Below are positions 8,100-63,490 of a DNA stretch of 64,000 bases, piece after piece (the stretch's first letter is position 1; each line of letters begins with the position of its first letter). A program made the position numbers and the translations under genes. The DNA comes from Scyliorhinus canicula. Its lineage: Eukaryota. The notes under the pieces were generated by a model, which was given only the letters and a program-made list of their open reading frames with translations, searched no databases and had not been told where the DNA came from. The DNA lies in NCBI RefSeq assembly GCF_902713615.1, contig NC_052174.1:10782514-10846513 (forward strand), in the 5' to 3' direction.

Positions 8100-8286
8100 C
8101 TACTTATCCAACCAAACTCTGTGGGAAATTTGCAAAAGTCCTCCCAACATCGTCATGTGGAATGTGGTCCTCTTCTCCATTTTACTGGTGTCCAGTGTGA
8201 TCGAACTGGTCTTCTGCGCGTTACAGGTCATCAATGGATGCATCGGGGTTTTCTGCGGAGATTGCCGGAAGAAAGGCAGGAAAGAT
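8100..8286 (+). CDS. TM4SF5: TM4SF5 exon 4, SYLSNQTLWEICKSPPNIVMWNVVLFSILLVSSVIELVFCALQVINGCIGVFCGDCRKKGRKD
   Basis: tttctccag acceptor, starts in phase 2 (compatible with exon 3), gtaagg donor. Contains L6-family WNVxLFS and the TM4SF5-type IGVFCGDCRKK end. Confidence 0.95.
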
Positions 8287-9949
8287 GTAAGGCCTTGTTT
8301 CACGTCATCAGCCTCGATCAGTCATTCTCTTCTCCAAGGGTTTTCACAATGTTACTTCTCCCACTATTCCAGTGCTAGGTCTAAGCTCCATCTTCAAAGG
8401 CACAGAGGGAGGCTGTTCAGCCCATTGGTTCAATGCTGGCACTCTGTAGAGCACCCCAGTCAATCCCGCTCCTTCTCATTCTATTCCTGCGGCCCTGGGC
8501 ATTTACTTCCCTCAGGTCTCTGTCCAATTTCCGTTTGACACAATACCGTGTCACCACCTCCACCACCTTGTCGACACCGAGTTCTAGGTCTTTACCACTC
8601 ACTGCTTCATAAACATTCTTCCCCACCCCCCCTCCCCCTCTGCATTTCTTGGCCCAATTCCTCAATCTGTGTCTCCCCGGGACCTTGTACCATCAGCCAA
8701 CGAGAGCAGCTTATCTTTGTCTACCTTGTCTAAACCTGTCACGATCTTGTACACCTCTTTCAAATCTCCCCTCAAGCTCCTTCGCTCCATGGAGGACAGC
8801 TCCAGCTTCTCCAACCCTAAACACGTAGTTCAAATCCATCATCCCTTGAACCATTCTGGTAAATCTCCCTCCGTCCCCTCTCCAGGAGCCTCACATCCTT
8901 CTCTGATGAAAGTAAGGATTTCAGATATATTATACCATAGGTATTGGGTGCAGTAAGAGTTAAAAGCTGGGGTTAGGGTGTGTATGACTGCTGCAGTACT
9001 GGTTCCAAAGAATACTGGTTTGAAAGATTTTGGGGAGCCAGGGGTGCAATTAAATCACTGTAAAAGCTTGGGCTGATGCAGTTTTGTTTGGATTAAGGGG
9101 GCTCCCTGTGGAGATAATTAGATTTCTGCTTGGTAAGATGATGTAATTACTGGGAGGAACTAAAGTGACGGGCATTTTGCAGGAAAGCAGTTTCGTTGAG
9201 CTTTAGATGAAGCTGTGAGCAGAAGTCAAGCATTTTTTTTCGCACTGTAGTTCAGTTAAAGACATGTCAGTAGATAGATTCATAGTTTCTTTCCAAGCAG
9301 TTCAGAATGTGTGATTGGAAGGTGAGCAACAGGGCAACCCCCTCACCTTCTGAACTGCTTGGATAGAAACTATGAATCTATCTACTGAAATAAGCTGAGA
9401 AGCAGCTTCTGAACAAATACATCCAGAGTTTCTGCAATGTTCTGACAGGAGTCAGATCTTTTCTTTTATAACAGTCTCAGAGAACATCTCTGTACAGCAG
9501 CTATTCCTGAGTGCTAACGGTATTTAAGAGAGAGCTGACCTTTTTTTGTTGTTGTTTGAGTGGGAATAAAGATAGCAGTTAAGGGTTTGGGTGCACATCC
9601 CTCCTTTGGACTCAATATCTCTATTCTGTTTCTTTATTCTGTTAACTGATGTGCGTGCCACTGGCAAGGCCAGTATTTGTTGCCCATCCCTAACTTCCCT
9701 TTCCTCTCGTCGCCATCGCTTGTTTGATCAATCACCTCAAATTGGTGCCATTTTGTTTCTTAGGTGCTCTTGAAATGAGTGGCTCATTCAGCTCTCAGCA
9801 ACAGGGCAACCCCCTCACCCTACCACCTTCCCACTGAAGCCCTGCACATGCCTCTCTTTGGATCATACTCGGGTACCCCTTTTAAAGCCTCAATTAAATC
9901 TCCCTTCACCACACTCTCAGGCAGCACATTCCAGACTAACCATCGGGTT

Positions 9950-14623: not shown

Positions 14624-15238
14624 TCAGCCATCCCAGTATGTCGCCCCTTTCTCAAGCCCCATTTCATTGATACAGAATTCCCGCATCTGTGGGGACAGTG
14701 ATAGATTTACAGACTGTCTTGTGATGGAGGCAGGCTTCGTAGCTGAGCAAGGAAGACACTGGTTTAGACGAGCAGCATGGTCGGCGCAGGCTTGGAGGGC
14801 CGCAGGGCCTGTCCTGTGCTGTACCTTTCTTTGTTCTTTGTTGACACTTTTCACGGCTGATGAACCACCCCCAGACATTGCGAACATGAAAATGTGGTTC
14901 CCCATGGGATCTCTGTAGGGAGCTGTGCCCAAACTCACAAAAAGTTGGTTCCCCTTTCGATCTGCTCTCCAGACGATATCTCGCTTCAGTAAAATATCCA
15001 GGTTACTCTCCAGCAGTTTAATCATGGATCCTTTCTGTATGATACTCCCACCCGGCAGCAACGTGTCGAATATGGTTCTGTTCAGGAATATCGACCGTAC
15101 GTCCGCTGGCTGGAGAGGAATCAGTTCGTAACATTCATCCTCACTTTTCTTCATATTACTGATCGCCGTGCTTGTCAAAGTGGGGACATTAATTGATGGA
15201 AATCGTAGAGAACTCCACAGCTATAGATGAAATGTATC
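14624..15238 (-). pseudogene. NAT16: Orphan NAT16/HISAT-like terminal exon, disabled
   Basis: Peptide LLPGGSIIQ..LESNLDILLKRDIVWRAD..VSLGTAPY..EFCINEMGLE resembles the NAT16 C-terminal domain. tacag acceptor precedes 15238; in-frame TAG at 15223-15221; 88-nt retro insertion; 16-nt deletion relative to the + copy. Confidence 0.85.
14761..14842 (+). mobile_element. Severely 5'-truncated CR1/HE1 3' tail inside the NAT16-like pseudoexon
   Basis: gagggccgcagggcctgtcctgtgctgtac plus (ttctttg)n tail; TSD GACACT at 14755-14760 and 14843-14848. Confidence 0.85.
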
Positions 15239-18716: not shown

Positions 18717-19935
18717 TATCAGAGTTGAAAAGTGCGGTTGATATTCATGTTACTATTTGGTGACCTATAGACTACGCCTATCAGGGAGTTTTTCACCTTA
18801 CTATTCCTAATTTCCACCCAAATGTATTCAACCTGATCCTCCATAGCACTGATGCCATCCCTCACTATTGCCCGGATGTCATCCTTAAATAACAGAGCTA
18901 CCCCACCTCCCTTACCATCCACTCTGTCCTTCCATAGTTTGATACCCTTGGATATTTAACTCCCAGTTGTGACCATCCTTTAACCATGTTTCAGTAATGG
19001 CCACTAAATCATAGTCATTCACGATGATTTGCGCCATCAACTCATTTACCTTATTCCGAATACAGCATTCAGGTGAAGTACACTTATGTTGCCTTTTATA
19101 CCTCTGTTTTGAATCTTAACACCTTGATCAGTAACCTCTCCTAAGTTATTTTTCCTCTTAACTTTTCTCCTAATTTTCCTTGTCGTTGAACCCATATCTT
19201 CATGTAACAGCCTGTCACGTCGCTGTCCATTTATGTTTTTACTTTCCGTTTTATTCCTTTTAGTATTACTGGGCCTATTCACTGAGCTCCCCTCAGTCCC
19301 TGTTCCTTGTATTGTCGCTCTTTTTAATTTTTGACTTCTCTGCCTTACAGTTTCGCCCTTACTGGCTTTTGTTTCTGTCCCTGTTTTACTACCTTCCGAC
19401 TTCCTGCATTGGTTCCCATCCCCCTGCCACATTAGTTTAAACCTTCCCCAACCTCTCTAGCAAATAGCCCCCCAGGACATCAGTTCCAGTCCTGCCCAGG
19501 TGTAACCCGTCCAGTTTGTACAGGTCCCACCAGCCCCAGAACTGGTCCCAATGCCCCAGGAATCTGAAACCCTCCCCCTGACCCCATCCCTTCAGCCATG
19601 TATTCATCCTAAATATCCAGTCATTTCTACTCTGACTAGCACATGGCACCGGTAGTAATCCTGAGATCACTACCTTCAAGGTCCGATTTCTTAATTTCCT
19701 TCCTAGCTCCCTGTATTCTGCTTTTAGGATGACATCCTTTTTTTTACCTGTCGTTTGTACCGATGTGTACCACGACCACTAGCTGTTCACCATCCCCCTC
19801 CAGAATGTCCTGTACCCGCTCCGAAACATCCTTGACCCTAGCACCAGGGAGGCAACATACCATCCTGGAGTCTTGTTTGTGACCTGTCTATTCCCCTCAC
19901 AATTGAATCCCCTATAACTTTCATTCCCAGTCCCT
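18717..19935 (-). mobile_element. CR1 5' portion (ORF1 esterase domain and ORF2 APE endonuclease start)
   Basis: IGDSIVRG and DGLHL (SGNH esterase) motifs; GGGVALLFK..IWVEIR..GVVYRSP. Confidence 0.88.
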
Positions 19936-19939
19936 GATT

Positions 19940-20666
19940 TCTCTTCAAGTTCCATCGATAAATGTTCCCACTCTGATAAGTGAGGTGATCAGTAACATGA
20001 AGAAACGTGGGGATGAATATTACGAACCGATTCCTCTCCAGCCAGGCCATGTGCAATCGATATTCCTGAACCGACCCGTGATCGACACGTTGCTGTCGGG
20101 AGAATCATTCTGAATGGAGCCATGTTCAAACCGCTGGAGAGTAACCTGGATATTTTACTGAAGCGAGATATCGTCTGGAGAGCAGATCGAGAGGGGAACA
20201 CACGGGCTGTGAGTTTGGGCACAGCTCCCTACAGAGATCCCATGGGGAACCGTGTTTTTGTGATCGACATGTTTGGAGAAGATTTATTAGCTGTGTAAAG
20301 TGTCTTCCTCTCTCAGCTGCAAAGCCTGCCTCCTTCACAAGACAATGTAATCTGTCTCCTGTCTGTAGGAGCTGGTTTAGCACACTGGGCTAAATGGCTG
20401 GCTTTGAAAGCAGACCAAGGCAGGCCAGCAGCATGGTTCAATTCCTGTACCAGGCGCTGGAATGTGGCGACTAGGGGATTTTTACAGTAACGTTATTTGA
20501 AGCCTACTTGTGACAATAAGCGATTCTCGTTCATTCAAAACCATCACTGTCCCCACAGATGTGTGAATTCTGTATCAATGAAATGGGGCTTGAGAAAGGA
20601 GAGACATACTTGAAGGATCGCTACATCGCAGAGGGGGAAATATCTATAATTATGGCTAAATTATAA
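19940..20666 (+). pseudogene. NAT16: Second orphan NAT16/HISAT-like terminal exon, disabled
   Basis: Clear homolog of 14624-15238 in opposite orientation; ends YIAEGEI...*. The 5' end is cut by a CR1; there is a frameshift near 20097, TAA at 20296-20298 and a SINE insertion at 20368-20536. Confidence 0.88.
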
Positions 20667-27812: not shown

Positions 27813-28040
27813 CAGGTTAGTAAAGAGTGATGTTTAAGATGGGAAGTAAATGAGCAATGGGAGGGTCTCATAGAGAGATCGTTCAGGTACACACGAGGCC
27901 CGTTCCCACAATGGGGGCTTCGGGGGGAAGGTTGCTGTTTCACCGTCACAATCCCAGTGCAGATTGGCAATCTTACTCCCACACTCTAATCGCCGACTAC
28001 CTCATATTTCCAATGAGTGAAACTTGAAGCAGGAACTTTG

Positions 28041-28080
28041 TGACTCAGAGGCTAGAGTGCGACCAATCAAACCACAGCTG
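28041..28080 (+). promoter_or_regulatory. Candidate promoter of copy A (AP-1 TGACTCA, CCAAT, AACCACA, E-box CAGCTG)
   Basis: Motif cluster about 300 bp upstream of the predicted ATG; all motifs are retained in copy B. Confidence 0.45.
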
Positions 28081-28383
28081 ACACTGTGCCTGAAGGCTAC
28101 CAACCCGACAAATTAGTTCAATCCCTCCCCACACATAGCCACATGCAAATGTCACCCATAAAGTTGCAAATAGGACAGCTTTCGGATATGTGAAGGCAGT
28201 CAGGCAGTTTCTGTTCACCTCCATGTTGAAGGGTCTGCTGTGGCACGTCTCGATTCTGTCTCCTACTTTGACGGAGGAATTCCCGCCGTGTGTGAGGGAA
28301 AATCCCAACATCCAACTCTCTTCCACCAGTTGGGTTGTTCTGATCAGTATCTGTAACACAGGCAGAACCAGGACTCCAGAAAT

Positions 28384-28412
28384 ATGGGTCTGTCTCTCTC
28401 GACTTGTAACAG
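28384..28412 (+). CDS. NAT16-like copy A, predicted first coding exon (MGLSLSTCN-R)
   Basis: aatATGG Kozak context, AG|gtaac donor, phase 2. Conserved in copy B with only a synonymous CTG/CTA change. Confidence 0.6.
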
Positions 28413-29699
28413 GTAACAATAATAATAATTGCTTATTGTCACAAGTAGGCTTCAATGAAGTTACTGTGAAAAGCCCCTAGTCGCCACAATCCGGCACCTG
28501 TTCGGGGAGGCTGGTACGGGAATTGAACCTGCGCTGCTGGCTTTGTTCTGTGTTACAAGCCAGCTGTTTAGCCCCGCTGTGCTAAAACAGCCCCTTAACC
28601 AGTTGTTCTGCCTGAACTGTTTCTATCAGTCCCTCTGCTAACTTTATAAACTCATCGTGTGTCAATGATTGAGATATTTAATGAACTCAGTCTCACAACA
28701 GATGATCTGTGGATTAAAACTTTCATTTTTACTGTGTAAATGAAGGAATCCTGAATTTTGCAAGTATAATTATTTGTACTGAAATGTTCATACCTGTGCA
28801 ATCATTTTTTACTTTAAACTTTAATTTTAATGACTGTCCATAACTATGTTGTGAATGATGAATTCTTGTTTTCTTTGTATCCTCACCACCATCTGGCACT
28901 TGACACGATGATGACGGCCGTCCATCATTCTGTTTGTCTCTTTGCTATCCTTTATCTATTTATCTCTCTCTCTCTCTCTATCGACTGTCTATCTCTGTCT
29001 CTCTATCTATCTATTAAACTCCCAGGAAGAGGAGGTGTGTGTTTGTCCGCAGTAACTGACTCTTGTACGATTGGTTTGAGACCCGCTTGTTTTTTCCGTG
29101 ACTTAAATGATTCGATGTGAAAGAGCAGCTGCTCCCTGAAGCATCTGAGTCCCGGGTGGAGGGGGAGGGGGCGGGGGAAGGTTAGGTAGGGACAGAGCAG
29201 CAACTCTCTAAACTCCCTCATCCTGACATTTCTCACCACTCGGAAGCTGTGTAAAGGCCAGCCCAAAATCAAATTATATCCAACAATCAAACTGCTCAAT
29301 AATTCCCCTTCGGCGGCTAATTCATGGTTTGTTCCGTAGTCACCGCCGACACCAACATGGCCGCCAGCTCTTTGCTGCTGTCAATATGACCATTAAAAGG
29401 GAGTCGGGGCCTCTCCCCCCTGACCTGGGGGTCCTGCTGCCCCCATGTTACACTGAACGACCACTCAGGGTTAAAATTAATTAACACCTGGTAAGTGGCA
29501 GACAGAATGTGAAAAACAGAGAGGTGTGGACCCAGGAAAAGGTCTCTACATTCAAAACCAGTTTAATCACATTTCACTACAGTTGCAACCCATGCTTTGC
29601 ATAAAAGATATTTGAAATTCAGGTTATTCTGCCTGGATGTTTACCCCACCCCTGAGTCAGAAGGGCCTCTCCTGAAACCTGAGCATATAATCCAAGCTC

Positions 29700-29885
29700 T
29701 GACCCTCCTGTGCTACACTGAGAGAGTGCAGCACGGTCAGAGACACTATTTGAGGGTGTGATGTTAACGGGAGTCCCGTTCGCCCTCTCAGGTGGATGTA
29801 AGTGTCCCTCGGTCAATATTTAAAGAGTCGATCCGTTCTCCTGGTGCCCTGAGAAAAACTTGTTACTCAACAACCTCACTGGAGA
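29700..29885 (+). mobile_element. Deu-domain SINE remnant shared by both duplication units (paralog 47075-47240)
   Basis: gagtgcagcac..gtcagag...gccctctcaggtggatgtaa core. Confidence 0.6.
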
Positions 29886-29952
29886 AATATGTTTCCATTT
29901 AATTTGGCTTCTCCTGTTCTGTCATCCCATTCCCACACCCACCTGAATCCAG

Positions 29953-30046
29953 GGCGATGAGGTCTTCTGCGATCCACAGTTACCTGAGAGCACCAGGCAG
30001 GCGACCGATGGGGAGGCCCGGAGTGAGGAGCTATATGACCAGACAG
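29953..30046 (+). CDS. NAT16-like copy A, predicted exon 2 (AMRSSAIHSYLRAPGRRPMGRPGVRSYMTRQ)
   Basis: Pyrimidine-rich tract ending tccag; CAG|gtgggt donor; 94 nt, phase 2 to 0. Joins exon 1 to exon 3 in frame in both copies. Confidence 0.55.
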
Positions 30047-31529
30047 GTGGGTAGTGTGAGCTGCTCTCCCAGACGCTTTTTAACTCAACTGTCCACCTCG
30101 TGACCCAGACGTGATCAACCAAATGAAAATGGTGTCCAAATCCCAGCACCGCACTTCGGGAGGGACGTAGAGGATTCAGAGAGTGTGGGGTAAAGATTGA
30201 CGAGAATGTTTCCGGGGATGTGGGATTTCAGACACAGTGGAGAGGCTGGGATTGTTGGTGGAGAAGAGAGGTTTATGGGGAGGTTTGAGCAAGGTGTTTC
30301 AAAACCATGAGGGGGTCTGAACGTAGTCGAGGTGGAAAAACTGCTCCCATTGGTGGTTAGATCGGAAACCAGAGGGATTGGTAAAAGAACCAGAGGTGAC
30401 AAGAGGAAAACATTTTTACTCAGTGAGTCATTAGGAATGCACAGCCTGAGAGTGTGGAGGAAGCAGATTCAATAGTGGTGTCCAAAAGGGAACTGGATGA
30501 ACACCTAAAGGGAAAAGATTTGCAACATTAGAGGGAACTGTTGTGGGAGGGGGACTAGCTGAGTGGGTCCTGTACAGAGCCAGTGGGGACATGGTGTTCA
30601 TTCTGTCTTTTGACAGCCATGCTGCATAAGTTTCAGGTTTTGATCAACTCCAACAAAACAGAGCCATTCTTCCTTGACATTCAATGGCATCACCATCACT
30701 GAATTCCCCAATTATCAATATCCTGGAGGTTTACAACTGCGTAACATTTATCAGCACCAGCTATATAAATACCAGGGCTATGAAAGCAGTCCAGTGGCTG
30801 GGAATCTGAGGAGAGTAACTCACCCCTGACTCCCAAGGTCCTGTCCATCGTCTACATGGCAAAATTGAGGGGTGCGATGGAAAACTCTCCATCTCCCTGG
30901 ATGAGTTTAGAGTAAAAGAGGCAGCGACAACATGCATATGAAATTGGTCAAGTGACAGGAGGCACAGTGGAGTTGTTAAAAGATGTATTTTCCCGCTGGA
31001 GGAAGGTCAGATGTCAATTTCTACAGGGACCTTTGCTTTTCCCGATCTATATTAACGACCTCGACTTTGGCACAATTTCAGGGTTTGCGGATGAGACAAA
31101 ACTTGGAAGAGTCGTGACCTGTGAGGAAGATAGCGGAGAATGTCAAAGTGACACAGTAAAGTTGGTGGAATGGGCAGATCCTACCGTTCAGTCTCTTCCT
31201 GGTTGTGTTGCTTCCTAAAGGTCACCTCCTCCAGCCTGACATCCCTCCAGGAAATCTCTGTTCCTGCAACCTGAGGCCTCTTGTCCATCTCCTCATCCTC
31301 TGCCCCACTATTGGTGACTGTGCCTCCATCATCCCGCCACTTTCCCCTTACCTCCTTTAGGAACATCTTTGAAAACCTACCTCTTTGTCCAATCTCCTCC
31401 TCCTAAAGCATCCGTCTATGTTTTCCTTGATGACCTTGGGTGGGGGTGGGGGGGGGGGGGGTGGGGGGGGGGGGGGGTGGGGGGGGGGGGTGGGGGGGGG
31501 GGGGGGGAGGAGGTGCGGTAATAGCTCAA

Positions 31530-36914: not shown

Positions 36915-37076
36915 TACTCTAAGTCGGACCTGGATTTTGACCTGGCTACAGAGAAGGATTTCAGACAGGTTGAGTCCCTTTTCAGCGATGAGACAGATTA
37001 CATACCGAGCATCTACCATTCCTGGCTTCGAGAGAGAAACCGCGTGGTCGTTCTGGCCAAACGTCAGGGTCAAGTG
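36915..37076 (+). CDS. NAT16: NAT16/HISAT-like copy A, GNAT exon (YSKSDLDFDLATEKDF...DYIPSIYHSWLRERNRVVVLAKRQGQV)
   Basis: 162 nt open, GTG|gtgagt donor. LDF..ATE..F and DY.PS.YHSWL....VVLAKR motifs match recalled NAT16. Confidence 0.9.
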
Positions 37077-40646: not shown

Positions 40647-40859
40647 ATCGGTCTGGGATCTGCTCTCATTGTGGATGATGGACACACAGCCGTAATTGAA
40701 CTGCTTAAAGTAGCTGCTTCAGAGTGGGGCAATGGAGTTGCCAGCTTGCTTCACCAAAGGTCTATCAAGCTGATAAGAGCGATGTCCTCAGAGGTTCAGA
40801 AGCAAAGTTTTATCACGGCGCTCAAGTTCTACAAAGGATGTTGTGTATTAGGCAAACAG
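40647..40859 (+). CDS. NAT16: NAT16/HISAT-like copy A, acetyl-CoA-binding GNAT exon (IGLGSALIVDDGHT...SEWGNGVA...VLGKQ)
   Basis: ttccag acceptor, CAG|gtac donor; 213 nt open; GNAT motif A variant. Confidence 0.9.
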
Positions 40860-41109
40860 GTACAATTTGCGTGCAGTTATACTCACACACCAGCTATGTT
40901 TCATTGTGTCACACTCCTGTCTCTGAGCTGTAAGGCTGGTGTTCCTACCAGAGATGGAGCATAAAAACCAAAGCTGCCACTCGCAGCACAGTTCGGAGGG
41001 AGTGCTGCACTGTCAGTGATGTTGACTTTTGGATGAAGTGCACTGATTTCCCAAGTGTCTGATCAGTTGAGTGTAAAGGTTCTCATGATGCCTATTTCAC
41101 AGGATCTCA

Positions 41110-41900
41110 TAATAATAGAGTGCAGGAGAGGACCATCGACCCATTGAGTCCGCACTGCGCCTGAAAAACACCTGACCTGCCTATCTGATCCCATTTGTCA
41201 GCACTTAGTCCATAACCTTGAATATTATGACGTGCCAAGTACTCATCCAGGTAGTGCGTTCCAGACCCTCACCATCCTCTGGCTTAAAACGATTTTCCTC
41301 CCAATCCTCCTAAACCTCCTGTCCCTCACCTTGAACTTGTGCCCCCCTCATAACCGACCCTTCACCTCAGGGGAACAGCTGCTCCCTATCCACCCTGTCC
41401 GTGCCCCTTATAATCTTGTCCACCTCGATCAGGTCACCCCTCAGTCTCTGCTCCAAGGAAAATAATCCAAGCCCATCCAACCTCTCTTCATAACCTAAAT
41501 GTTCCATCCCAGGCAACTGGTGAATCTCCTCTGCGCCCCCTCCAGTGCAATCACATCCTTCCTATAGTGTGGTGACCAGAATTGCACACAAAACTCCAGC
41601 TGTGGCCTCACCAAAGTTCTATACAACTCCAACATGACCTCCCTGCTTTTGTAACCCATGCCTTGACTAATAAAGACAAGTGTCCCATGTGCATTTTTGA
41701 CCACCCCATTAACCTGCCCTTCCGCCTTCAGAGATCCATGGACAAACACTCCAAGGTCCCTTTGTTCCTTGGAACTTCCCAGTGTCAGGCCATTCATTGA
41801 ATACCCACTTGTCGTGTTACCTCTTCCAAAGTGGATCACCTCACACTTTCCAGGGTTAAATTCCATCTGTCACTTTTGTAACCATCCCATCTATATCCTC
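41110..41900 (-). mobile_element. CR1 3' fragment
   Basis: MEFNPGKCEVIHFG...RPQLEFCVQFWSPH. Confidence 0.9.
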
Positions 41901-44886
41901 CTGTAAGACAAATGGGGAATTTCACTATTGTCCCTGGAAAAATGTACCCTGAATAAGAAAAATTATCCACTCGTTATCACGGTGTTCTTTGTGGGATCTT
42001 GCTGTGCACACACTGGCTTCAAATTATTATATCAATCTGTGTCTCTCTGTTTTTTACTATGTAATTGAACATAATGTATTCTCCTGGACAAGATTAACAA
42101 ACCCCAGTGCTGATCAACCTCTGCAACGCTGGGAAATTGACCCGAATGATGTTTTTCAGAAACAAACAACCAGAAATATAAATTTCACAGAGAGTCAGTG
42201 AGAGATTCTGTCTGAATCTTTCTCACTGAACAGTTTTAATGAGTGAAGGACAATGACCCATATCTTCCAGGTTTCCCGGCGTCGCATGTAGGGGATATCC
42301 CTATGATGTCCTGGAAATCCCTCCCGGATGTTCCAACGTGAGGGTTTACCCGAAAACCTCCCGGAAGTGCTAACTTCATCTGGACAATTACGCTGGGCTG
42401 GGAATTATCGGACAGACAATGATTTAGGTCACTAACTTCACATGGTCCTGCTAGTTTCACCCTGATAGTTACTCTGAAAGAGTTAGAGGAAAGAAGTCAC
42501 TCCTAACTGCAGAGTAACTATGTAAAAAACCCAAATGCAGAAACCTATCCCTCTTGGACGTAGCCCCCTCCTTCACTCCCTCCCGGACTGACGTCTGCCT
42601 CCCTTCCCCGCTGACGTCCAATTTGGATTGATTGTCACATGTTCTGAGGTATAGTGAAAAGTATTGTTCTGCGTACAGTCCAGACAGATCGTCCCACACA
42701 TGAAAAACATAGCACATACGGTAAATACAGTGTAAATACATAGAAATAGACATCGTGTGAAGCATATGGAATGTAGTGCTACTCAGTAGAGAAGACGCGT
42801 GAAGAGATCAGTTCAGTCCATAAGAGTGTCATTTAGGACATCCAAACTTCCCATCCCGGAGAAATCCATCTCCCTCCCTCCTAGACAGATCATCCCCCCA
42901 AATCCTTCCCCCCCTTCCTGGTTGACCCCCCCACACTTGCCCCCTGCCGTTCAAACCCCTGCCCCCCTCTCAATTGGGTACGAATACCTGCCCCCTCCCC
43001 CCTCGACATTCCCTAATCTTATAATTTACCCTCCCTCTTTATTGCAGCTGATCCTGTAAAAAGGAAGGGTTACTGACCTCTCTGCGCCAGTGGTACTGCC
43101 GTGCCAATCGGTGCCATGGTTCCCAAGATCCGAACTTTACGGACGCTTTTACGAACGGTCAGACCAGGTGTGTTTGACGTTCCTAAAAACGGTCGTAAAG
43201 GGCTTGGACTTCGGCCCATCGGCCAGCTGAGAATCGCTGCTCGCCGTAAAAAAACGGCGGGCAGCGATTCGTGTCGGGAGGCGGGCGTGGGGGGGAGAAT
43301 AGCGGGAGGGCGTCAGACTAGCGTGGCCGTACAAATTTACGACCCCCGCTATTCTCCGCACCGTCGTGAGTGCGGAGAATCGCTCCCCTCATTTTTTAAA
43401 TTACCCGCGATTCTCTGCCCGATTGCAATTCAGGTTTCCGGGAGTTACGATGCTCAGAATCCAGATCATGGTTGAGGTCTTAAAAATCTTGAGGAGTGTG
43501 CACAAAGCCAAAAGCGAGAAAGTGTTCCTGCTCGTGGAAGAACCAAGAACGAAAGAATACGGATTAGAGGTAATTTGTGAAAGGAGCAAAACGACATGTG
43601 AAACGCAGAGGGATTGGTTAGGGTCTGCCTGAGAGTATGGGAGAGGCAGATACAATCGAGCATTCACACGGAATTTAGACTGTTATTTCAAAAGAAAGTG
43701 TTCAGCATCACGGGGAGAAGGTGCGACAATGGCACTGGGTAATTGGCTCATGGGGGGGGGGGGGAGAGCCGGCACAGACAGGATGGGCCCAACGGCCTCC
43801 TTTTGCGCTGTAACAAATCCCTGATTCCATGATGTTAATTAGTGCCCTCTCACTGCGGCCATTGCCTGGAATCTGTGCTTGATGATCATGGGCAAATGTG
43901 GACTTGACCAAGTAGGAGGTCCGTCTCCCATGGATACCGCAGCGGTGGATGACGGGTGTGTGGGAGGACAGAGGGTAGAAGCAGAGAAATAGAATCCTCA
44001 ATGTAGTAAAATGTGATGCAAAATGTCCTTCAGCCTGCAGTGTGACTGAACTTTGCATTGATAAAGTGAGCTAACATCAAAAAGACAATATCAGATGATA
44101 AAATGTAATATAAAGAATAAACGTTTCACAATATTAGTAGGTTATACCAAATACAAAGCAATGTAGGGTAGGAGAAAGGGATTCACAGGATATGGGGCAA
44201 AGAAATAGGCCATTCAGCCCAACCAGCCTCTGCTGTAATCTTCCCAATTCTTGACAATAGTGAGGTTGAAGGGCAGCACGTTGGTGCAGTGGGTTAGAAC
44301 TGCTGCCTCACGGCACTGAGGACCCAGGTTCAATCCCAGCCCTGGATCACTCTCTGTGTGGAGTTTGCACATTCGCCCCGTGTCTGCGTGGGTCTGACCC
44401 CCATAAACCCAAAGTGTGCAGGGTAGCTGGACGTTACATTGACCCTTAATTGGAAAACTTAACATAAAAGAGTGAGGTTTCAGATGGGAGGTAAATGAGC
44501 AATGGGAGGGTCTCACAGAGAGATTGTTCAGGTACACACAAGGTACATTCCCACAATGGGGGTGGGAAATGTTAATGTTAAAATTTCACAATCCCAGTGC
44601 AGATCGGCAATCGTATCGACTACACTCTAATGATCGACGGCCTCACATTTCACCCTCCGACTGTCTGATTCCTGCGCCCGATCTACTCTTTATTCCAACC
44701 TTGTTTGTCTTTCACAAGCCCCAGTGCACCTTGTTTCACCCACCATTTCAATAAAATAGATTTGCATTGCTATAGCGCCTTTAAGCTCAGCAGCCAATCT
44801 ATGCATGGCAAGATTCCACAGTCAGCATTGGGATAATGACCAGGTAATATGTTTCTGGGGATGTTGTTGAGGGATCAGGATGTTTG

Positions 44887-44924
44887 TGACTCAGACTAGA
44901 GTGTGACCAATCGAACCACAGCTG
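44887..44924 (+). promoter_or_regulatory. Candidate promoter of copy B (TGACTCA, CCAAT, AACCACA, CAGCTG)
   Basis: Paralogous to 28041-28080. Confidence 0.45.
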
Positions 44925-45246
44925 ACTGGCACTGTGTCTGAATGCTGCACCCTGCTTCTCCAACCCAACAAATTTGTTCAATCCCTCCCCACGCTTATCC
45001 GCAAGTAAATTTCAACCAGAAAGTTGCAAATAGGACAGTGCCATCTGGTATGTTAAGGCAGGCGGGGCAATTTCTGTTCACCTGCACATTGAAGAGTCTG
45101 CTGTGACACGTCTCAATTCTATCTCCTACTCTGAAGGAAGGATTCCTGCCGTGTGCGTGGGGAAAATCCCAACATCCGACTCTCTTCCACCAGTTGGGTT
45201 ATTCTGGTCAGTATATGTAACACAGACAGAACCAGGACTTCTGAAT

Positions 45247-45275
45247 ATGGGTCTATCTCTCTCGACTTGTAACAG
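45247..45275 (+). CDS. NAT16-like copy B, predicted first coding exon (MGLSLSTCN-R)
   Basis: Paralog of 28384-28412; AG|gtaat donor. Confidence 0.6.
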
Positions 45276-46023: not shown

Positions 46024-46162
46024 NNNNNNNNNNNNNNNNNNNNNNNNNNNNNNNNNNNNNNNNNNNNNNNNNNNNNNNNNNNNNNNNNNNNNNNNNNNNN
46101 NNNNNNNNNNNNNNNNNNNNNNNNNNNNNNNNNNNNNNNNNNNNNNNNNNNNNNNNNNNNNN
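46024..46162. other. Assembly gap (139 N)
   Basis: Run of N next to simple repeats. Confidence 1.
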
Positions 46163-47308
46163 ACACATTGTAATTTACTCTTCTGTTTTGTCTGAATATT
46201 GTCACTCACTGTCTCTCTATTTGCTCGGTTCTATCAGTCTCTCTCTCACTTTCTCTCAACTCCAGGTTCTATCTCTCGGGCTCTTTTTCTCCCTCCCTTT
46301 CTCCACTATTTTCTGCTGCCTTTAAACAGTGTCAGTCTGGTCTTCGAGCACACGACTATTCCGTTGATAACGCCAAGCGCTGCTCCACGGGGTAATCCAG
46401 TCAGTAGTGACTGGTTGAGATGCATTTGTTTTTCCCCGAGACTAAAATAATTCGATGTGAAAGAGCAGCTGCTCCCTCAAGCGTCTGAGTCCCGGGTGGA
46501 GAGCGTAGAGGGTTAGGTAGGGACAGAGCAGTAACTCTCTAAACGCCCTTGTCCTGACATATTTTTCATCACTTGGAAACTGTAAAAGCCAGCGCAATAT
46601 AAAATAAAATCCAACAATGAAACTGCTCAATAATTCACCTTCGACGGCTAATTCATGGTTTATTCTGGAGTCACCGTCGACACCAACATGGCCGCCAGCT
46701 CTTTGCCCCTGTCAATATGACCATTAAAGGGGAGCCGGGGCCTCTCCCTCTGACCTGGGGGATCCGCTGCCCCATGTTACACTGAACGACCACTCAGGGG
46801 GTTAAAATTAATTAACACTTGATAATTGGCAGACAGAATGTGAAAAACAAACAGGTGTGGACCCAGGAGAAGGTCTCTACATTCACAGCCAGTTGAATGA
46901 TATTTATCTCCAGTTACAACCCACTTTTTTGCATAGATATTTGCAATTTAGGTTGTTCTGCCTGGGTGTTTCCCACATCACTGAGTCAGAAGGGCCTCTC
47001 CAGAAACCTGAGCATATAATCCAAACTCTGACCCTCACTGACAGACAATGAGTGACAATATTCAGACAAAAACAGAGAGAGTGCAGCACTGTCAGAGACA
47101 TTATTTGATGGGTGTGATGTTAATGTGAGTCCCGTTCGCCCTCTCAGGTGGATGTAAGTGTCCCTCGGTCAATATTTAAAGAGTCGATCAGTTCTTCTGG
47201 TGCCCTGGGAAAACTTGTTACTTAACCAACCTCACTGGAGAAATATTTTTTCATTTAATTTGGCTTCTCCTGTTCTGTCGTCCCATCTCCACACCCACCT
47301 GAATCCAG

Positions 47309-47402
47309 GGCGATGAGGTCTTCTGCGATCCACAGTTACCTGAGAGAACCAGGCGGGCGACCGATAGGGAGGCCCGGAGTGAGGAGCTATACGACCAGAC
47401 AG
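47309..47402 (+). CDS. NAT16-like copy B, predicted exon 2 (AMRSSAIHSYLREPGGRPIGRPGVRSYTTRQ)
   Basis: 94 nt with the same splice sites as copy A; 4 nt differences. Confidence 0.55.
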
Positions 47403-47616
47403 GTGGGTAGTGTGAGCTGCTCTCCCAGATGCTTTTTAACTCAACTGTCACCTCGTGACCCAGAGGTGATCAACCAAATGTAAATGGTGTCCTAATCCCA
47501 GCACCGCACTTCGGGAGGGACATAGAGGATTCAGAGAGTGTGGGGTAAAGATTGACAAGAATGTTTCTGGGTATGTGGAACTTCAGTCACTGGACAGACT
47601 GGAGAAGCTGGTGTTA

Positions 47617-49632
47617 TAATGCATTTAGTGTTGGCGAGTCCACTACTGTTGCAGGCAGGGCATTCCACGCCCTTACTACTCTCTAAGTAAAGAACCTACG
47701 TCTGACATCTGTCCTATATCTATCTCCCCTCAATTTAAAACTATGCCCTCTCATGCTAGCCATCACCATCTGAGGAAAAAGGCTCTCACTGTCCACCCTA
47801 TCTAATCCTCTGATCATCTTGTACGCCTCAATTAAGTCACCTCTTAACCTTCTTCTCTCTAACGAAAACAGCCTCAAGTCCCTCAGCCTTCCCTCATAAG
47901 ATCTTCCCTCCATACCAGGCAACATTCTGGTAAATCTCCTCTGCACCCTTTCCAATGCTTCCACATCCTTCCTATAATGCGGCGACCAGAATTGCATGCA
48001 ATACTCCAAATGCGGCCGCACCAGTGTTTTGTACAGCTGCAACATGACCGCATGACTCCGAAACTCAATCCCTCTACTAATAAAAGCTAACACATCGTAC
48101 GCCTTCTTAACAACCCTCTCAACCTGGGTGGCAACTTTCAGGGATCTATGCACATGGACACCGAGATCTCTCTGCTCATCCACACTACCAAGAATCTTCC
48201 CATTAGCCCAGTACTCTGTCTTCGTGTTATTCCTTCCAAAATGAATCACCTCACACTTTTCTGCATTAAACTCCATTTGCCACCTCTCAGCCCAGCTCTG
48301 CAGCTTATCTATGTCCCTCTGTAACTTGTAACATCCTTCCGCACTGTCCACAACTTCACCGACTTTAGTGTCATCTGCAAATTTACTCACCCATCCTTCT
48401 ACGCCCTCCTCCAGGTCATTTATAAAAATGACAAACAGTAGTGGCCCCAAAACAGATCCTTGTGGCACACCACTAGTAACTGGACTCCAGTCTGAACATT
48501 TCCCATCAACCACCACCCTTTGCCTTCTTCCAGCTAGCCAATTTCTGATCCAAACTGCTAAATCACCCTGAATCCCATGCCTCTGTATTTTCTTGCAATA
48601 GCCTACCGTGGGGAACCTTATCAAATGCTTTACTGAAATCCATATACACCATCTCAACTGCTTAAACCTCATCCACCTGTTTGGTCACCTTCTCAAAGGA
48701 CTCAATAAGGCTTGTGAGGCACGACCTACCCTTCACATAACCGTGTTGACTATCTCTAATCAAATTATTCCTTTCCAGATGATTATACATCCTGGACGGA
48801 ATTCTCCCGTGCGGAATCGGGAAGGCTGCCGTGAACTCGGCCGAGTTTCACGACAGCCTCGGAGGCCGCTCCTCGCACCCTATTCACCCCCCCCCCCCCC
48901 CAGGGGGCTAGGAGCGCCGCTGGGCCTTGACACTTGCATCAAGGCGGCACGCCGAGAATGACGCGATGGGGGCGCCTAAGTGACGTCAGCCGCACATGCG
49001 CAGGTTGGCCGGCTCCAACCCGTGCATGCGCGGCTGACGTCACGACGGCTCGAACCCGCACATGCGCGTTTGCAGTCTTCCCCTCCGCTGCCCCGCAAGA
49101 TGTGGTGGCTTGATCTTGCGGGGCGGCGGAGGGGAAAGAGTGCGTCGCTTTGAGACGCCGGCCCGACGATCGGTGGGCACCGATCACGGGCCAGTCCCCT
49201 CCTGAGCACGGCCGTGCTGCTCACTCCCCTCTCCGCCCCCCATAAGCTTCAAACGAGCATTTGGCGCCACGTTCATGCCGGCAGCGACCAGGTGTGGTTG
49301 GCGCCGTCGTGAACCGGTCGGGAACGTCAGGCCGCTCGGCCCATCCGGGCCGTAGAATCGCCGGCCTGCCGTGAAAAACGGCGAGCGGCAATTCATCCGA
49401 GCGGGGGATGAGAGAATCGTTGAGGGTGCCAGTGGGGCGTGTCTTGAGTCGCCCGGCCCTCCCGCGGTTCTCCCACCCGGCGTGGGGAGCGGAGAATTCC
49501 GCCCCCTATCTCTTATAAACCTTTCCAAGACTTTGCCCACAACAGAAGTAAGGCTCACTGGTCTATAGTTACCGGGATTGTCTCTACTTCCCTTCTTGAA
49601 CAAGGGGACAACATTTGCTATCCTCCAGTCTT
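47617..49632 (-). mobile_element. Young CR1 RT region (329-aa open ORF at 47683-48672)
   Basis: GVPQGSVLGP, FADDTK, RPHLEYCMQFW and GNYRPVSLTS motifs. Confidence 0.95.
48794..49504. mobile_element. GC-rich MITE (Harbinger/PIF-like) inserted in CR1
   Basis: TIR GG(A/G)CGGAATTCTCC; 3-bp TSD CCT at 48791-48793 and 49505-49507. Related ends near 3958-4220, 14190-14250 and 43370-43390. Confidence 0.8.
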
Positions 49633-52400: not shown

Positions 52401-52404
52401 GTAA

Positions 52405-56284: not shown

Positions 56285-56446
56285 TACTCAGAGTCAGACC
56301 TGGATTGTTGCCTGGCTACAGAAAAGGATTTTGGACATGTACAATCCCTTTACAACGATGAGACAGATTACATGTCGAGCGTCTACCATTCCTGGCTGCG
56401 AGAGAGAAACCATGTGGTCTTTTTGGCCAAACTCCATGGTCAAGTG
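56285..56446 (+). CDS. NAT16: NAT16/HISAT-like copy B, GNAT exon (YSESDLDCCLATEKDF...DYMSSVYHSWLRERNHVVFLAKLHGQV)
   Basis: 162 nt open; same boundaries as copy A; gtgagt donor. Confidence 0.9.
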
Positions 56447-63277: not shown

Positions 63278-63490
63278 ATTGGTCTGGTTTCTTCTCACAT
63301 TGTGGATGACGGACAGACAGTCCTGATGCAATGTGTAAAAGTAGCTGCTTCAGAGAGAGGCAAAGGAGTTGGACGGCTGATGTACAAACACATTGTTGAG
63401 CTTGCAACAACAAGGTTCCCGCAGCTGAAGAAGCAAAGTTTTGTCACAGATCACAAGCTCGACAGAGGACTTTGTGTATTAGGCACACAG
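63278..63490 (+). CDS. NAT16: NAT16/HISAT-like copy B, acetyl-CoA-binding exon (IGLVSSHIVDDGQT...SERGKGVG...VLGTQ)
   Basis: tttccag acceptor, CAG|gtac donor; 213 nt open; intact ERGKGVG motif A. The terminal exon is presumably beyond the window. Confidence 0.92.

What the first reader, a model, noticed from the sequence alone, without database searches (positions are those of the whole stretch)
28384..30046. Predicted novel N-terminus (MGLSLSTCNR...) with N-myristoylation consensus spliced onto a NAT16-like enzyme
Seen in both copies: a 29-nt exon (good Kozak, only a synonymous difference) and a 94-nt exon splice in phases 2 and 0 into the GNAT exon with no stop. MGxxxS fits the NMT consensus, followed by Cys8 and an Arg-rich stretch that could be a second membrane signal. 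Recalled human NAT16 starts MKLE, without Gly2. Inference: a membrane-anchored paralog. Caveat: all 4 exon-2 differences between copies are nonsynonymous in this frame, and another open frame exists.
Basis: partly seen in the sequence, partly recalled or inferred. Interest (0 to 1): 0.7.

Follow-up and report, generated by a model that had tools for sequence, protein, structure and literature searches.

The report
Conserved myristoylation-type leader on shark HisAT-like genes
Two small upstream exons in a catshark cluster of NAT16/histidine-acetyltransferase-like genes really are spliced and coding, and give the enzyme a 41-residue flexible leader that starts with a strongly conserved lipid-anchor (N-myristoylation) motif, although the lipid itself is untested and the gene copy at these coordinates is truncated.

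Summary
The window is Scyliorhinus canicula. Both tandem units carry a 29-nt exon (ATG, A at -3, G at +4) and a 94-nt exon that read in frame into the GNAT exon. Spliced contigs from public runs of two studies show the 28412>29953 junction, and every contig stops aligning at the 30046 donor.

- The same leader, MG[L/I]SLSTCNR followed by an Arg-rich stretch, heads RefSeq models of paralogs in S. canicula and S. torazame and of Heptranchias perlo.
- H. perlo DNA has the same exon lengths and phases.
- The first 10 codons give dN 0.07 against dS 1.3.
- The other open frame carries a stop in H. perlo.

The leader is found only in this shark clade. It is predicted disordered and fits PROSITE PS00008. 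N-myristoylation is therefore the best reading (about 0.55) but is unproven. An acid-free, Arg-rich mitochondrial presequence is a real rival.

Three caveats apply. Copy A, the given coordinates, has no Hisat_C exon and has lost the Arg of its acetyl-CoA motif. The leader is already in RefSeq predictions for paralogs, though not for these two genes. The clade lacks the histidine-stacking Tyr74 and Trp246, so it is probably not a histidine acetyltransferase. The scan noted this cluster before, on the same window.

The parts
28179..28383 (+). Copy A 5' leader (minimum extent). It contains an upstream ATG at 28223 in weak context. That upstream ORF runs in another frame and ends at a TGA overlapping the exon-2 ATG. 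The upstream ATG is absent from copy B.
   Evidence: Contig X1 record 1 covers 28179-28409. The upstream ATGs are listed. The A/B/H. perlo alignments show a partly conserved leader.
28384..28412 (+). Copy A coding exon 1. It encodes MGLSLSTCN plus 2 nt of the Arg10 codon. It is the first in-frame ATG after an in-frame stop 30 nt upstream.
   Evidence: Spliced junction. Of 7 minimal changes among four sequences, 6 fall at third codon positions (P=0.0046). dN 0.07 against dS 1.3 versus H. perlo.
29761..29797 (+). Alternative 5' exon (ATG at 29761, donor gtaagt after 29797). When joined to exon 2, its reading frame stops at the TGA that overlaps the exon-2 ATG.
   Evidence: Contig X6 record 30 shows the joint 29797>29953. 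RefSeq XP_038642678.1 (P0001) starts with this exon. The stop is my reading of the sequence.
29953..30046 (+). Copy A coding exon 2 (94 nt). It encodes an Arg-rich, acid-free stretch with the conserved core IHSYLRAPG and an in-frame ATG at its 5th base.
   Evidence: Contigs from four runs cover it and end at 30046. H. perlo has an exon of the same 94 nt in the same phase.
36915..37076 (+). Copy A exon 3, the start of the N-terminal GNAT domain.
   Evidence: Matches human NAT16 structures 9emd/9emo at E=1e-9. 100% identical to P0001 residues 25-78.
40647..40859 (+). Copy A exon 4 (GNAT motif A region). The acetyl-CoA motif reads WGNGVA instead of RGKGxA. dN/dS against copy B is 0.75.
   Evidence: The role of Arg131 is taken from PMC12219266.
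43048..43059 (+). Tiny non-homologous terminal coding piece (LIL-stop) used by RefSeq XP_038642678.1. Copy A has no Hisat_C exon.
   Evidence: tblastn finds no exon-5 homolog between 40860 and 45247.
45247..45275 (+). Copy B coding exon 1 (same peptide as copy A, one synonymous difference).
47309..47402 (+). Copy B coding exon 2.
56285..56446 (+). Copy B exon 3.
   Evidence: 98% identical to P0056 = XP_038642680.1.
63278..63490 (+). Copy B exon 4. Exon 5 lies beyond the window end.
   Evidence: 100% identical to P0056, which continues with a full Hisat_C part.

Best explanation
Exons 28384-28412 and 29953-30046, and their copy-B twins, are the true first two coding exons of a shark-specific clade of tandemly duplicated NAT16/HisAT-like double-GNAT genes in Scyliorhinus canicula. 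They add a 41-residue disordered leader in front of the GNAT fold.

Shown:
- The exons are transcribed and spliced together.
- The first ten residues, MG[L/I]SLSTCNR, are under strong purifying selection between catsharks and a cow shark. The rest of the leader evolves fast but stays Arg-rich and almost acid-free.

Inferred mechanism:
- The initiator Met is removed, and N-myristoyltransferase acylates Gly2 co-translationally.
- Cys8 may then be palmitoylated.
- The lipid, together with the basic stretch, holds the enzyme on a membrane. Canonical NAT16 is cytosolic.
- Alternative 5' exons and the in-frame exon-2 ATG give isoforms without Gly2, so lipidation would be switchable.

Copy A itself ends after exon 4 and is most likely a transcribed, decaying partial duplicate. 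Copy B and several paralogs are full length.
For: Splicing: contigs X1 (328 nt) and X2 record 14 join 28412 to 29953 with GT..AG. Exon 2 is held at 0.7-1.0 of its sampled words by five runs that hold only 0.07-0.11 of the 1.8-kb genomic stretch.

Frame and conservation:
- The same leader heads RefSeq models P0049, P0052 (with an in-frame 4-residue deletion) and P0059 of S. canicula, P0048 of S. torazame, and P0002/P0043 of Heptranchias perlo.
- The H. perlo locus L001 has a 29-nt and a 94-nt exon in the same phases.
- Exon 1: 6 of 7 minimal changes fall at third codon positions, P=0.0046. dN is 0.07 against dS 1.28.
- The ATG is the first in-frame start after a stop, with A at -3 and G at +4, in all three DNA sequences.
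- The other frames of exon 2 carry stops in H. perlo.

Motif: G2-L/I-S-L-S6-T fits PROSITE PS00008 in every sequence. The pattern itself is from my own knowledge.

Place in the protein: residues 1-38 of P0049 have pLDDT below 50, while the double-GNAT body is confident (mean 80).

Clade-specific: a search with the leader alone finds only shark HisAT-like proteins. Canonical NAT16/HisAT starts MKLE or MKID and is cytosolic in human cells (PMC12219266).

Isoforms: P0068, P0050 and P0044 start at the exon-2 ATG, and P0053 and P0067 use other first exons. Contig X6 joins 29797 to 29953.
Against: - No lipidation or localisation data exist. PS00008 is a permissive pattern, and no dedicated NMT predictor could be run.
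- Cys8 lies further from Gly2 than the usual palmitoylated Cys3-6 (my own knowledge).
- The basic residues are Arg spread over 40 residues rather than a tight Lys cluster. With 0-1 acidic residues and a conserved phi-x-x-phi-phi element (IH[S/T]YL), the stretch looks like a mitochondrial presequence.
- Exon 2 outside its core has dN/dS of about 1.4.
- Between copies A and B, exon 2 is no better conserved than its intronic flanks, at about 95% each.
- Copy A has an upstream ATG at 28223.
- The 30046>36915 junction was not read directly.
- RefSeq models of copies A and B themselves do not use exon 1.
- Copy A lacks the Hisat_C exon.
Confidence: 0.55

Rival explanations
1. The leader is translated but works as a mitochondrial, or other organellar, targeting presequence. 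The Arg-rich, acid-free 30-40 residues bind TOM20 through IH[S/T]YL and are cleaved near VRSY|T. Gly2 is then either not acylated, or its acylation only tunes targeting.
For: K+R is 6-8, D+E is 0-1 and S+T is 8-11 in 41-48 residues. The phi-x-x-phi-phi element is conserved in catshark and H. perlo. The sequence evolves fast while its composition is kept, as presequences do. The leader is disordered and sits directly before the fold. Isoforms starting at the exon-2 ATG keep the whole Arg-rich part. Myristoylated proteins that go to mitochondria are known: CYB5R3 (PMC2133939) and SAMM50, TOMM40, MIC19 and MIC25 (PMC6235283).
Against: The peak hydrophobic moment is no higher than in shuffled sequences (shuffle p 0.12-0.38). 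Many Pro and Gly residues break the helix. An R-3 type cleavage motif is clear in Scyliorhinus but not in H. perlo (my reading). A presequence does not explain near-identity of the first ten residues at dN/dS of about 0.05. No TargetP- or MitoFates-type predictor was available.
Confidence: 0.2
2. Most protein starts at the in-frame ATG of exon 2 (MRSSAIHS...). Exon 1 then serves mainly as 5' UTR or regulatory leader in vivo, or the leader is a disordered extension with no targeting role.
For: RefSeq isoforms begin at the exon-2 ATG (P0068, P0050, P0044). In copy A, the ORFs of the upstream ATG at 28223 and of the alternative exon both end at a TGA overlapping that ATG, which is a layout that allows re-initiation (my reading). 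An alternative 5' exon is joined to exon 2 in contig X6.
Against: Codon-position bias and dN/dS of about 0.05 in exon 1 require translation of exon 1 in this frame over long evolutionary time. The context of the exon-1 ATG (A at -3, G at +4) is conserved in all three DNA sequences. The upstream ATG at 28223 is not conserved in copy B.
Confidence: 0.15
3. The two exons are non-coding 5' UTR, or are read in the other open frame of exon 2 (GDEVFCDPQLPE...).
For: A Heterodontus RefSeq model (P0045) reads the homologous stretch in the other frame.
Against: The other frame has a TAA in H. perlo exon 2. In the catshark it cannot be entered from exon 1 without meeting a TAA (my reading of the sequence). 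P0045 is a 468-residue model with an implausible N-terminus.
Confidence: 0.04

Closest known systems
Human NAT16 / vertebrate HisAT (histidine N-acetyltransferase; PDB 9emd, 9emo; PMC12219266)
   Same: Same double-GNAT family. Paralog P0049 matches 9emd at E=1e-42 over residues 43-351 and carries Pfam Acetyltransf_1 and Hisat_C. The acetyl-CoA motif R131-x-x-G134-x-A/G136 is kept in copy B and the paralogs.
   Different: Canonical proteins start MKLE or MKID within the first GNAT exon and have no Gly2. Human NAT16 is cytosolic. The shark clade has two extra 5' coding exons. It lacks the histidine-stacking residues: Trp246 is Gly in 12 of 12 sequences, and a 3-residue deletion removes the Tyr74 position. 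Identity to teleost HisAT is only 34-37%.
NADH-cytochrome b5 reductase (CYB5R3)
   Same: A soluble-type enzyme fold with an N-terminal MGxxxS-type myristoylation motif, where the lipid decides membrane targeting (PMC2133939). From my own knowledge, an alternative first exon yields a non-myristoylated soluble form, as the isoforms here would.
   Different: Unrelated fold and reaction. CYB5R3 also has a hydrophobic anchor after the motif. The shark leader has none (maximum Kyte-Doolittle mean over 15 residues 0.2-0.8) and is Arg-rich instead.
N-myristoylated mitochondrial proteins SAMM50, TOMM40, MIC19, MIC25 (PMC6235283)
   Same: An N-terminal myristoylation motif that arose within a vertebrate lineage and is conserved between species. 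It was tested there by G2A mutants and metabolic labelling, which is the experiment needed here.
   Different: These are structural or import proteins, not GNAT enzymes, and the lipidation of the shark proteins is untested.
RefSeq 'histidine N-acetyltransferase-like' models of sharks (for example XP_038642938.1 of S. canicula, and the H. perlo isoform X1)
   Same: They carry the same leader, MG[L/I]SLSTCNR plus the Arg-rich stretch, and the same exon 2/3 junction.
   Different: The RefSeq models of the two genes in this window use other starts. XP_038642678.1 (copy A) uses the 29761 exon and a lengthened exon 3. XP_038642680.1 (copy B) starts inside an intronic retroelement ORF at 51639-51734.

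Membership tests
NAT16/HisAT family (double GNAT) | N-terminal GNAT domain homologous to NAT16 | tested here: met
   Exon 3 matches 9emd/9emo at E=1e-9. Exon 4 gives a weak match on its own at E=0.02. Paralog P0049 matches at E=1e-42. Pfam Acetyltransf_1 is found in P0001 and P0049.
NAT16/HisAT family (double GNAT) | Acyl-CoA motif R/Q-x-x-G-x-G/A (human Arg131, Gly134, Ala136) | tested here: inconclusive
   Kept in copy B (RGKGVG) and in all 12 shark paralogs examined, except that P0002 has Leu at position 136. Copy A reads WGNGVA, so the Arg is lost.
NAT16/HisAT family (double GNAT) | C-terminal Hisat_C (second GNAT) domain | tested here: inconclusive
   Present in copy B's RefSeq product P0056 and in the paralogs. 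Absent from copy A: there is no homolog between 40860 and 45247, and RefSeq ends copy A with LIL-stop at 43048.
Histidine N-acetyltransferase (by function) | Residues that sandwich the histidine imidazole (human Tyr74 and Trp246) | tested here: not met
   Trp246 is Gly in 12 of 12 shark-clade proteins, and the Tyr74 position falls in a 3-residue deletion. Both residues are kept (Tyr74 as Tyr or Phe) in the ten non-shark HisAT/NAT16 sequences aligned, which include sturgeon, coelacanth, lungfish, lamprey, gar and teleosts. Residue roles are from PMC12219266.
N-myristoylated proteins (NMT substrates) | Initiator Met followed by Gly2, with this ATG as the used start | tested here: inconclusive
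   Gly2 is present, and the ATG is the first in-frame start in good context in three DNA sequences. The coding signature of exon 1 is clear. Actual initiation in vivo is not shown, and alternative starts exist.
N-myristoylated proteins (NMT substrates) | Sequence pattern G-{EDRKHPFYW}-x(2)-[STAGCN]-{P} (PROSITE PS00008), with Ser/Thr at position 6 | tested here: met
   GLSLST and GISLST match in all four sequences tested. The pattern itself is from my own knowledge.
N-myristoylated proteins (NMT substrates) | Covalent myristate on Gly2 that is lost in a G2A mutant | not testable with these tools
   Needs metabolic labelling or mass spectrometry.
Mitochondrial matrix-targeting presequence | Net positive charge, few or no acidic residues, rich in hydroxylated residues | tested here: met
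   K+R 6-8, D+E 0-1, S+T 8-11.
Mitochondrial matrix-targeting presequence | Amphipathic helix | tested here: inconclusive
   The peak hydrophobic moment does not exceed that of shuffles (p 0.12-0.38). AlphaFold gives no helix in residues 1-38. A phi-x-x-phi-phi element is conserved.

The most novel reading that the evidence does not exclude
Sharks evolved a clade of lipid-anchored double-GNAT acyltransferases from the cytosolic histidine acetyltransferase. The clade gained a two-exon leader carrying a myristoylation motif, with a possible palmitoylation site at Cys8. It also lost both residues that hold histidine. It would therefore acylate a different, membrane-proximal amine. Alternative first exons would switch each paralog between a membrane-bound form and a soluble or mitochondrial form.
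Probability: 0.2. Interest if true: 0.6.

Novelty: new variant of a known kind. Interest (0 to 1): 0.35.

Why it matters
NAT16/HisAT was only recently shown to be the cytosolic enzyme that makes acetylhistidine. This locus belongs to a shark-wide, tandemly expanded offshoot of that family. The offshoot carries a strongly conserved N-terminal lipidation-type motif and has lost the histidine-binding residues. If the motif is used, a soluble metabolic enzyme has been turned into a membrane-tethered one with a new substrate, and a G2A/labelling experiment plus a substrate screen would test this directly. On the practical side, the result corrects the RefSeq starts of two catshark genes and flags copy A as a truncated duplicate.

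Tried and rejected
- **Other open frame of exon 2.** Rejected: there is a TAA in H. perlo, and the frame is closed by a TAA through exon 1 in the catshark.
- **Comparing copies A and B alone to judge constraint.** Uninformative: about 250 bp of intron on either side of exon 2 is as similar (about 95%) as the exon itself. dS for exons 1+2 is 0.03, against 0.36-0.46 in exons 3 and 4, which suggests a young or converted 5' tract.
- **Reading the exon 2>3 junction from reads.** The only read-laying run covered 28000-30300. The letters beyond 30046 in X5, X6 and X2 were not printed.
- **Searching for transcript-derived protein fragments across that junction.** A search with P0049:1-95 returned only P0001.
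- **Fetching DNA of paralogs and orthologs.** No gene on record for P0049. For P0067, P0054, P0045, P0057 and P0044 the genes were found but no DNA was served. Only the H. perlo locus came back.
- **Amphipathic-helix test for a presequence.** Not above shuffles.
- **Shared downstream constant exon for copy A** (the idea in note s1-243633). No exon-5 homolog follows copy A inside the window. RefSeq ends copy A at 43048. Splicing into copy B's exon 5 could not be tested.
- **Literature.** No paper was found on shark HisAT-like genes or on a lipidated NAT16 relative.
Full report
**1. What is in the sequence**

The coordinates are right. Exon 1 (28384-28412, 29 nt) begins with an ATG in the context agaaatATGG and ends at a gtaaca donor. 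Exon 2 (29953-30046, 94 nt) follows a ...tccag acceptor and ends at a gtgggt donor. A second unit has the same two exons at 45247-45275 and 47309-47402.

Joined to the GNAT exon at 36915 (copy A) or 56285 (copy B), both units read without a stop. Exon 3 is 162 nt (36915-37076). Exon 4 is 40647-40859 in copy A and 63278-63490 in copy B. One search placed copy B's exon 4 one base off; searches confirm its corrected register, but copy B was not re-spliced as a whole.

Exons 3 and 4 are NAT16-like. Exon 3 matches the human NAT16 crystal-structure sequences 9emd and 9emo at E=1e-9.

**2. Which genome and which genes**

A library-wide search with exon 3 returned P0001, which is 100% identical, and P0002, a 360-residue relative.
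- P0001 is RefSeq XP_038642678.1. P0056 is XP_038642680.1. Both are named 'histidine N-acetyltransferase-like [Scyliorhinus canicula]' and lie on one 16.1-Mb record.
- P0001 is copy A. P0056 is copy B: exons 3 and 4 are 98-100% identical, with a complete C-terminal half encoded beyond the window.
- Neither model uses exon 1. P0001 starts at an ATG at 29761 and lengthens exon 3 upstream. P0056 starts inside an intronic retroelement ORF at 51639-51734; the ORF has RNase H and integrase domains.

**3. Transcription and splicing**

Five runs hold 0.7-1.0 of the sampled words of exon 2 but only 0.07-0.11 of the surrounding 1.8 kb. That is the pattern expected of spliced RNA. Their contigs were laid on 28000-30300:
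- X1 record 1 (328 nt) covers 28179-28412 joined to 29953-30046, with GT..AG ends.
- X2 record 14 shows the same joint.
- X5, X6 and X2 records cover exon 2 with 0-1 mismatch and run on for 73, 44 and 10 letters beyond 30046. The donor is therefore used, but the partner exon was not printed.
- X6 record 30 joins an alternative donor at 29797 (gtaagt) to 29953.
- X2 record 9 is a third paralog or allele. Its exon 1 differs from copy B by two more synonymous changes.

These runs are only guessed to be RNA. Intron removal at canonical splice sites is the argument that they are. Depths are low (3-11).

**4. Is it coding, and in which frame?**

Copies A and B alone cannot answer this. About 250 bp of intron on either side of exon 2 is as similar between copies (about 95%) as the exon. 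Other sequences decide it.

(a) *Protein models.* The same leader heads RefSeq models of paralogs P0049, P0052 and P0059 (S. canicula), P0048 (S. torazame) and P0002/P0043 (Heptranchias perlo). The first ten residues are MGLSLSTCNR, or MGISLSTCNR in H. perlo. The cores IH[S/T]YLRAPG and PGVR are also shared. P0052 has an in-frame deletion of four residues. Cetorhinus P0054 starts inside the same frame of exon 2.

(b) *H. perlo DNA.* Locus L001 has a 29-nt exon and a 94-nt exon with the same phases.

(c) *Exon 1 substitutions.* Across four sequences there are at least 7 changes, and 6 are at third codon positions (P=0.0046). Between catshark and H. perlo, dN is 0.07 and dS is 1.28.

(d) *The other frames.* The second open frame of exon 2 has a TAA in H. 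perlo, and the third frame has stops everywhere. In the catshark, the second frame read back through exon 1 meets a TAA.

(e) *The start codon.* The ATG is the first in-frame start after an in-frame stop, with A at -3 and G at +4, in all three DNA sequences.

Outside its conserved core, exon 2 evolves fast (dN 0.42, dS 0.29). It stays basic and nearly acid-free.

**5. What the leader looks like**

- In an AlphaFold model of P0049, residues 1-38 have pLDDT below 50. The double-GNAT body is confident: mean pLDDT 80, pTM 0.78.
- The leader has 6-8 Arg+Lys, 0-1 Asp+Glu and 8-11 Ser+Thr, and no hydrophobic segment. It fits PROSITE PS00008 at Gly2, with Ser at position 6.
- A search with the leader alone finds only shark HisAT-like proteins.
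- Canonical NAT16/HisAT proteins of lamprey, gar, sturgeon, coelacanth, lungfish, teleosts and mammals start MKLE, MKID or similar, directly before the GNAT fold.
- Human NAT16 fractionates with the cytosol (PMC12219266).

**6. Most likely mechanism, and its rivals**

*Best reading (0.55).* The exon-1 start gives a Gly2 protein that N-myristoyltransferase acylates. Cys8 is a possible palmitoylation site, and the basic stretch would help membrane binding. The near-identity of ten residues over the galeomorph-squalomorph split is what an NMT recognition segment would show, and what a mere spacer would not. Isoforms that start at the exon-2 ATG (P0068, P0050, P0044) or use other first exons (P0053, P0067, and the 29797 donor) would lack the lipid.

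*Main rival (0.2).* The leader is a mitochondrial presequence. Its composition, its fast evolution, a conserved phi-x-x-phi-phi element and an R-3-like VRSY|T site in Scyliorhinus all fit. However, amphipathicity is not above shuffles, and the site is unclear in H. perlo. The two readings are not exclusive. Myristoylation directs CYB5R3 to the outer mitochondrial membrane (PMC2133939), and SAMM50, TOMM40, MIC19 and MIC25 are myristoylated (PMC6235283).

*Weaker rivals.* A start mainly at the exon-2 ATG (0.15), and non-coding or other-frame use (0.04).

**7. Limits for the copy at the given coordinates**

- Copy A has no Hisat_C exon. tblastn with full-length paralogs finds exon-5 homologs only at 15211-14630 (minus strand, with an insertion) and at 19925-20645 (plus strand, split over three frames). 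Both lie upstream of copy A, and there is none between 40860 and 45247.
- RefSeq ends copy A with a tiny exon at 43048 that encodes LIL-stop.
- Exon 4 of copy A has WGNGVA where the family has RGKGxA. In human HisAT, Arg131 binds the CoA analogue.
- Its dN/dS against copy B is 0.75, compared with 0.38 for exon 3.

Copy A is therefore most likely a transcribed partial duplicate. Copy B and several paralogs are complete.

**8. Comparison with what is known**

- Family membership in NAT16/HisAT is clear for the clade: E=1e-42 to 9emd, with Pfam Acetyltransf_1 and Hisat_C.
- Membership in 'histidine acetyltransferase' by function fails a tested feature. Trp246 is Gly in 12 of 12 shark-clade proteins, and the Tyr74 position falls in a 3-residue deletion. 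The ten non-shark sequences aligned keep both (Tyr74 as Tyr or Phe).
- A second shark subfamily (P0019, S. torazame) lacks the leader.
- No paper on these shark genes or on a lipidated NAT16 relative was found.
- The leader is present in RefSeq predictions, so the sequence is not new. The reading of it, and the corrected starts for copies A and B, are.

**9. Verdict**

Myristoylation and membrane anchoring are plausible but untested. This is a new variant of a known enzyme family, of moderate interest. Earlier first-reader notes on this same window (s1-243633, s1-243504) agree on the truncated copy A and on the birth-and-death cluster.

Noticed in passing
shark HisAT-like proteins P0049, P0056, P0002 and others; alignment A5: In all 12 shark-clade proteins, the residue aligned with human Trp246 is Gly, and a 3-residue deletion removes the Tyr74 position. 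These are the two residues that stack on the histidine imidazole. The acetyl-CoA motif is kept. The clade is probably not a histidine acetyltransferase.
   Followed up: partly
window 40860-45246 and 43048-43059: Copy A has no Hisat_C exon. RefSeq XP_038642678.1 ends it with a tiny exon (cag|CTGATCCTGTAA). Whether exon 4 can also splice into copy B's distal exon 5 was not tested.
   Followed up: partly
window 19925-20645 (+) and 14630-15211 (-): Two orphan Hisat_C terminal exons lie upstream of copy A. The plus-strand one is split over three reading frames. The minus-strand one has an in-frame insertion of about 40 residues. They look like remains of further copies in a birth-and-death cluster.
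   Followed up: partly
window 51594-52469 and 47683-48672 (copy B intron 2): The intron holds retroelement ORFs with RNase H and integrase zinc-finger domains on the plus strand and a reverse transcriptase on the minus strand. RefSeq XP_038642680.1 takes its first 32 residues from 51639-51734 of this element, which looks like an annotation artefact.
   Followed up: partly
window 28223 and 29761, with the TGA at 29958-29960: In copy A, the ORFs that start at the upstream ATG 28223 and at the alternative-exon ATG 29761 both end at a TGA overlapping the in-frame exon-2 ATG (ATGA). This layout could favour re-initiation and give the isoform without Gly2. The upstream ATG at 28223 is not present in copy B.
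   Followed up: no
window 29725-30250 versus 47075-47603: A tract of about 500 bp around exon 2 is about 95% identical between the copies, and dS for exons 1+2 is 0.03. Exons 3 and 4 have dS 0.36-0.46, and other flanks are 82-87% identical. This suggests gene conversion, or a younger origin, of the 5' part.
   Followed up: partly
window 29970-30000 versus L001 4347-4377: The core of exon 2 (GGATCCACA.TTACCTGAGAGCACCAGGCA) is almost identical at the nucleotide level between catshark and Heptranchias, synonymous sites included. Exon 1 shows many synonymous changes over the same distance. An extra constraint at the RNA or DNA level is possible.
   Followed up: no
window 8155-8538 (+): An ORF matches the C-terminal end of the Pfam L6_membrane (TM4SF) family at E=5e-11. 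It is probably the last exon of a neighbouring TM4SF gene.
   Followed up: partly
window 52525-53111: A GC-rich (about 64%) stretch with long overlapping ORFs on both strands, made of a proline-rich repeat (PQPVPEPVPP-like). It lies inside the retroelement-bearing intron of copy B.
   Followed up: no
window 46024-46162: A run of 139 N in intron 1 of copy B. It was left as it is.
   Followed up: no
Heterodontus francisci locus of P0045: The HisAT-like gene there lies next to a DAGAT-family gene. From memory, human NAT16 lies next to MOGAT3, so the shark cluster may sit at the orthologous NAT16 locus.
   Followed up: no
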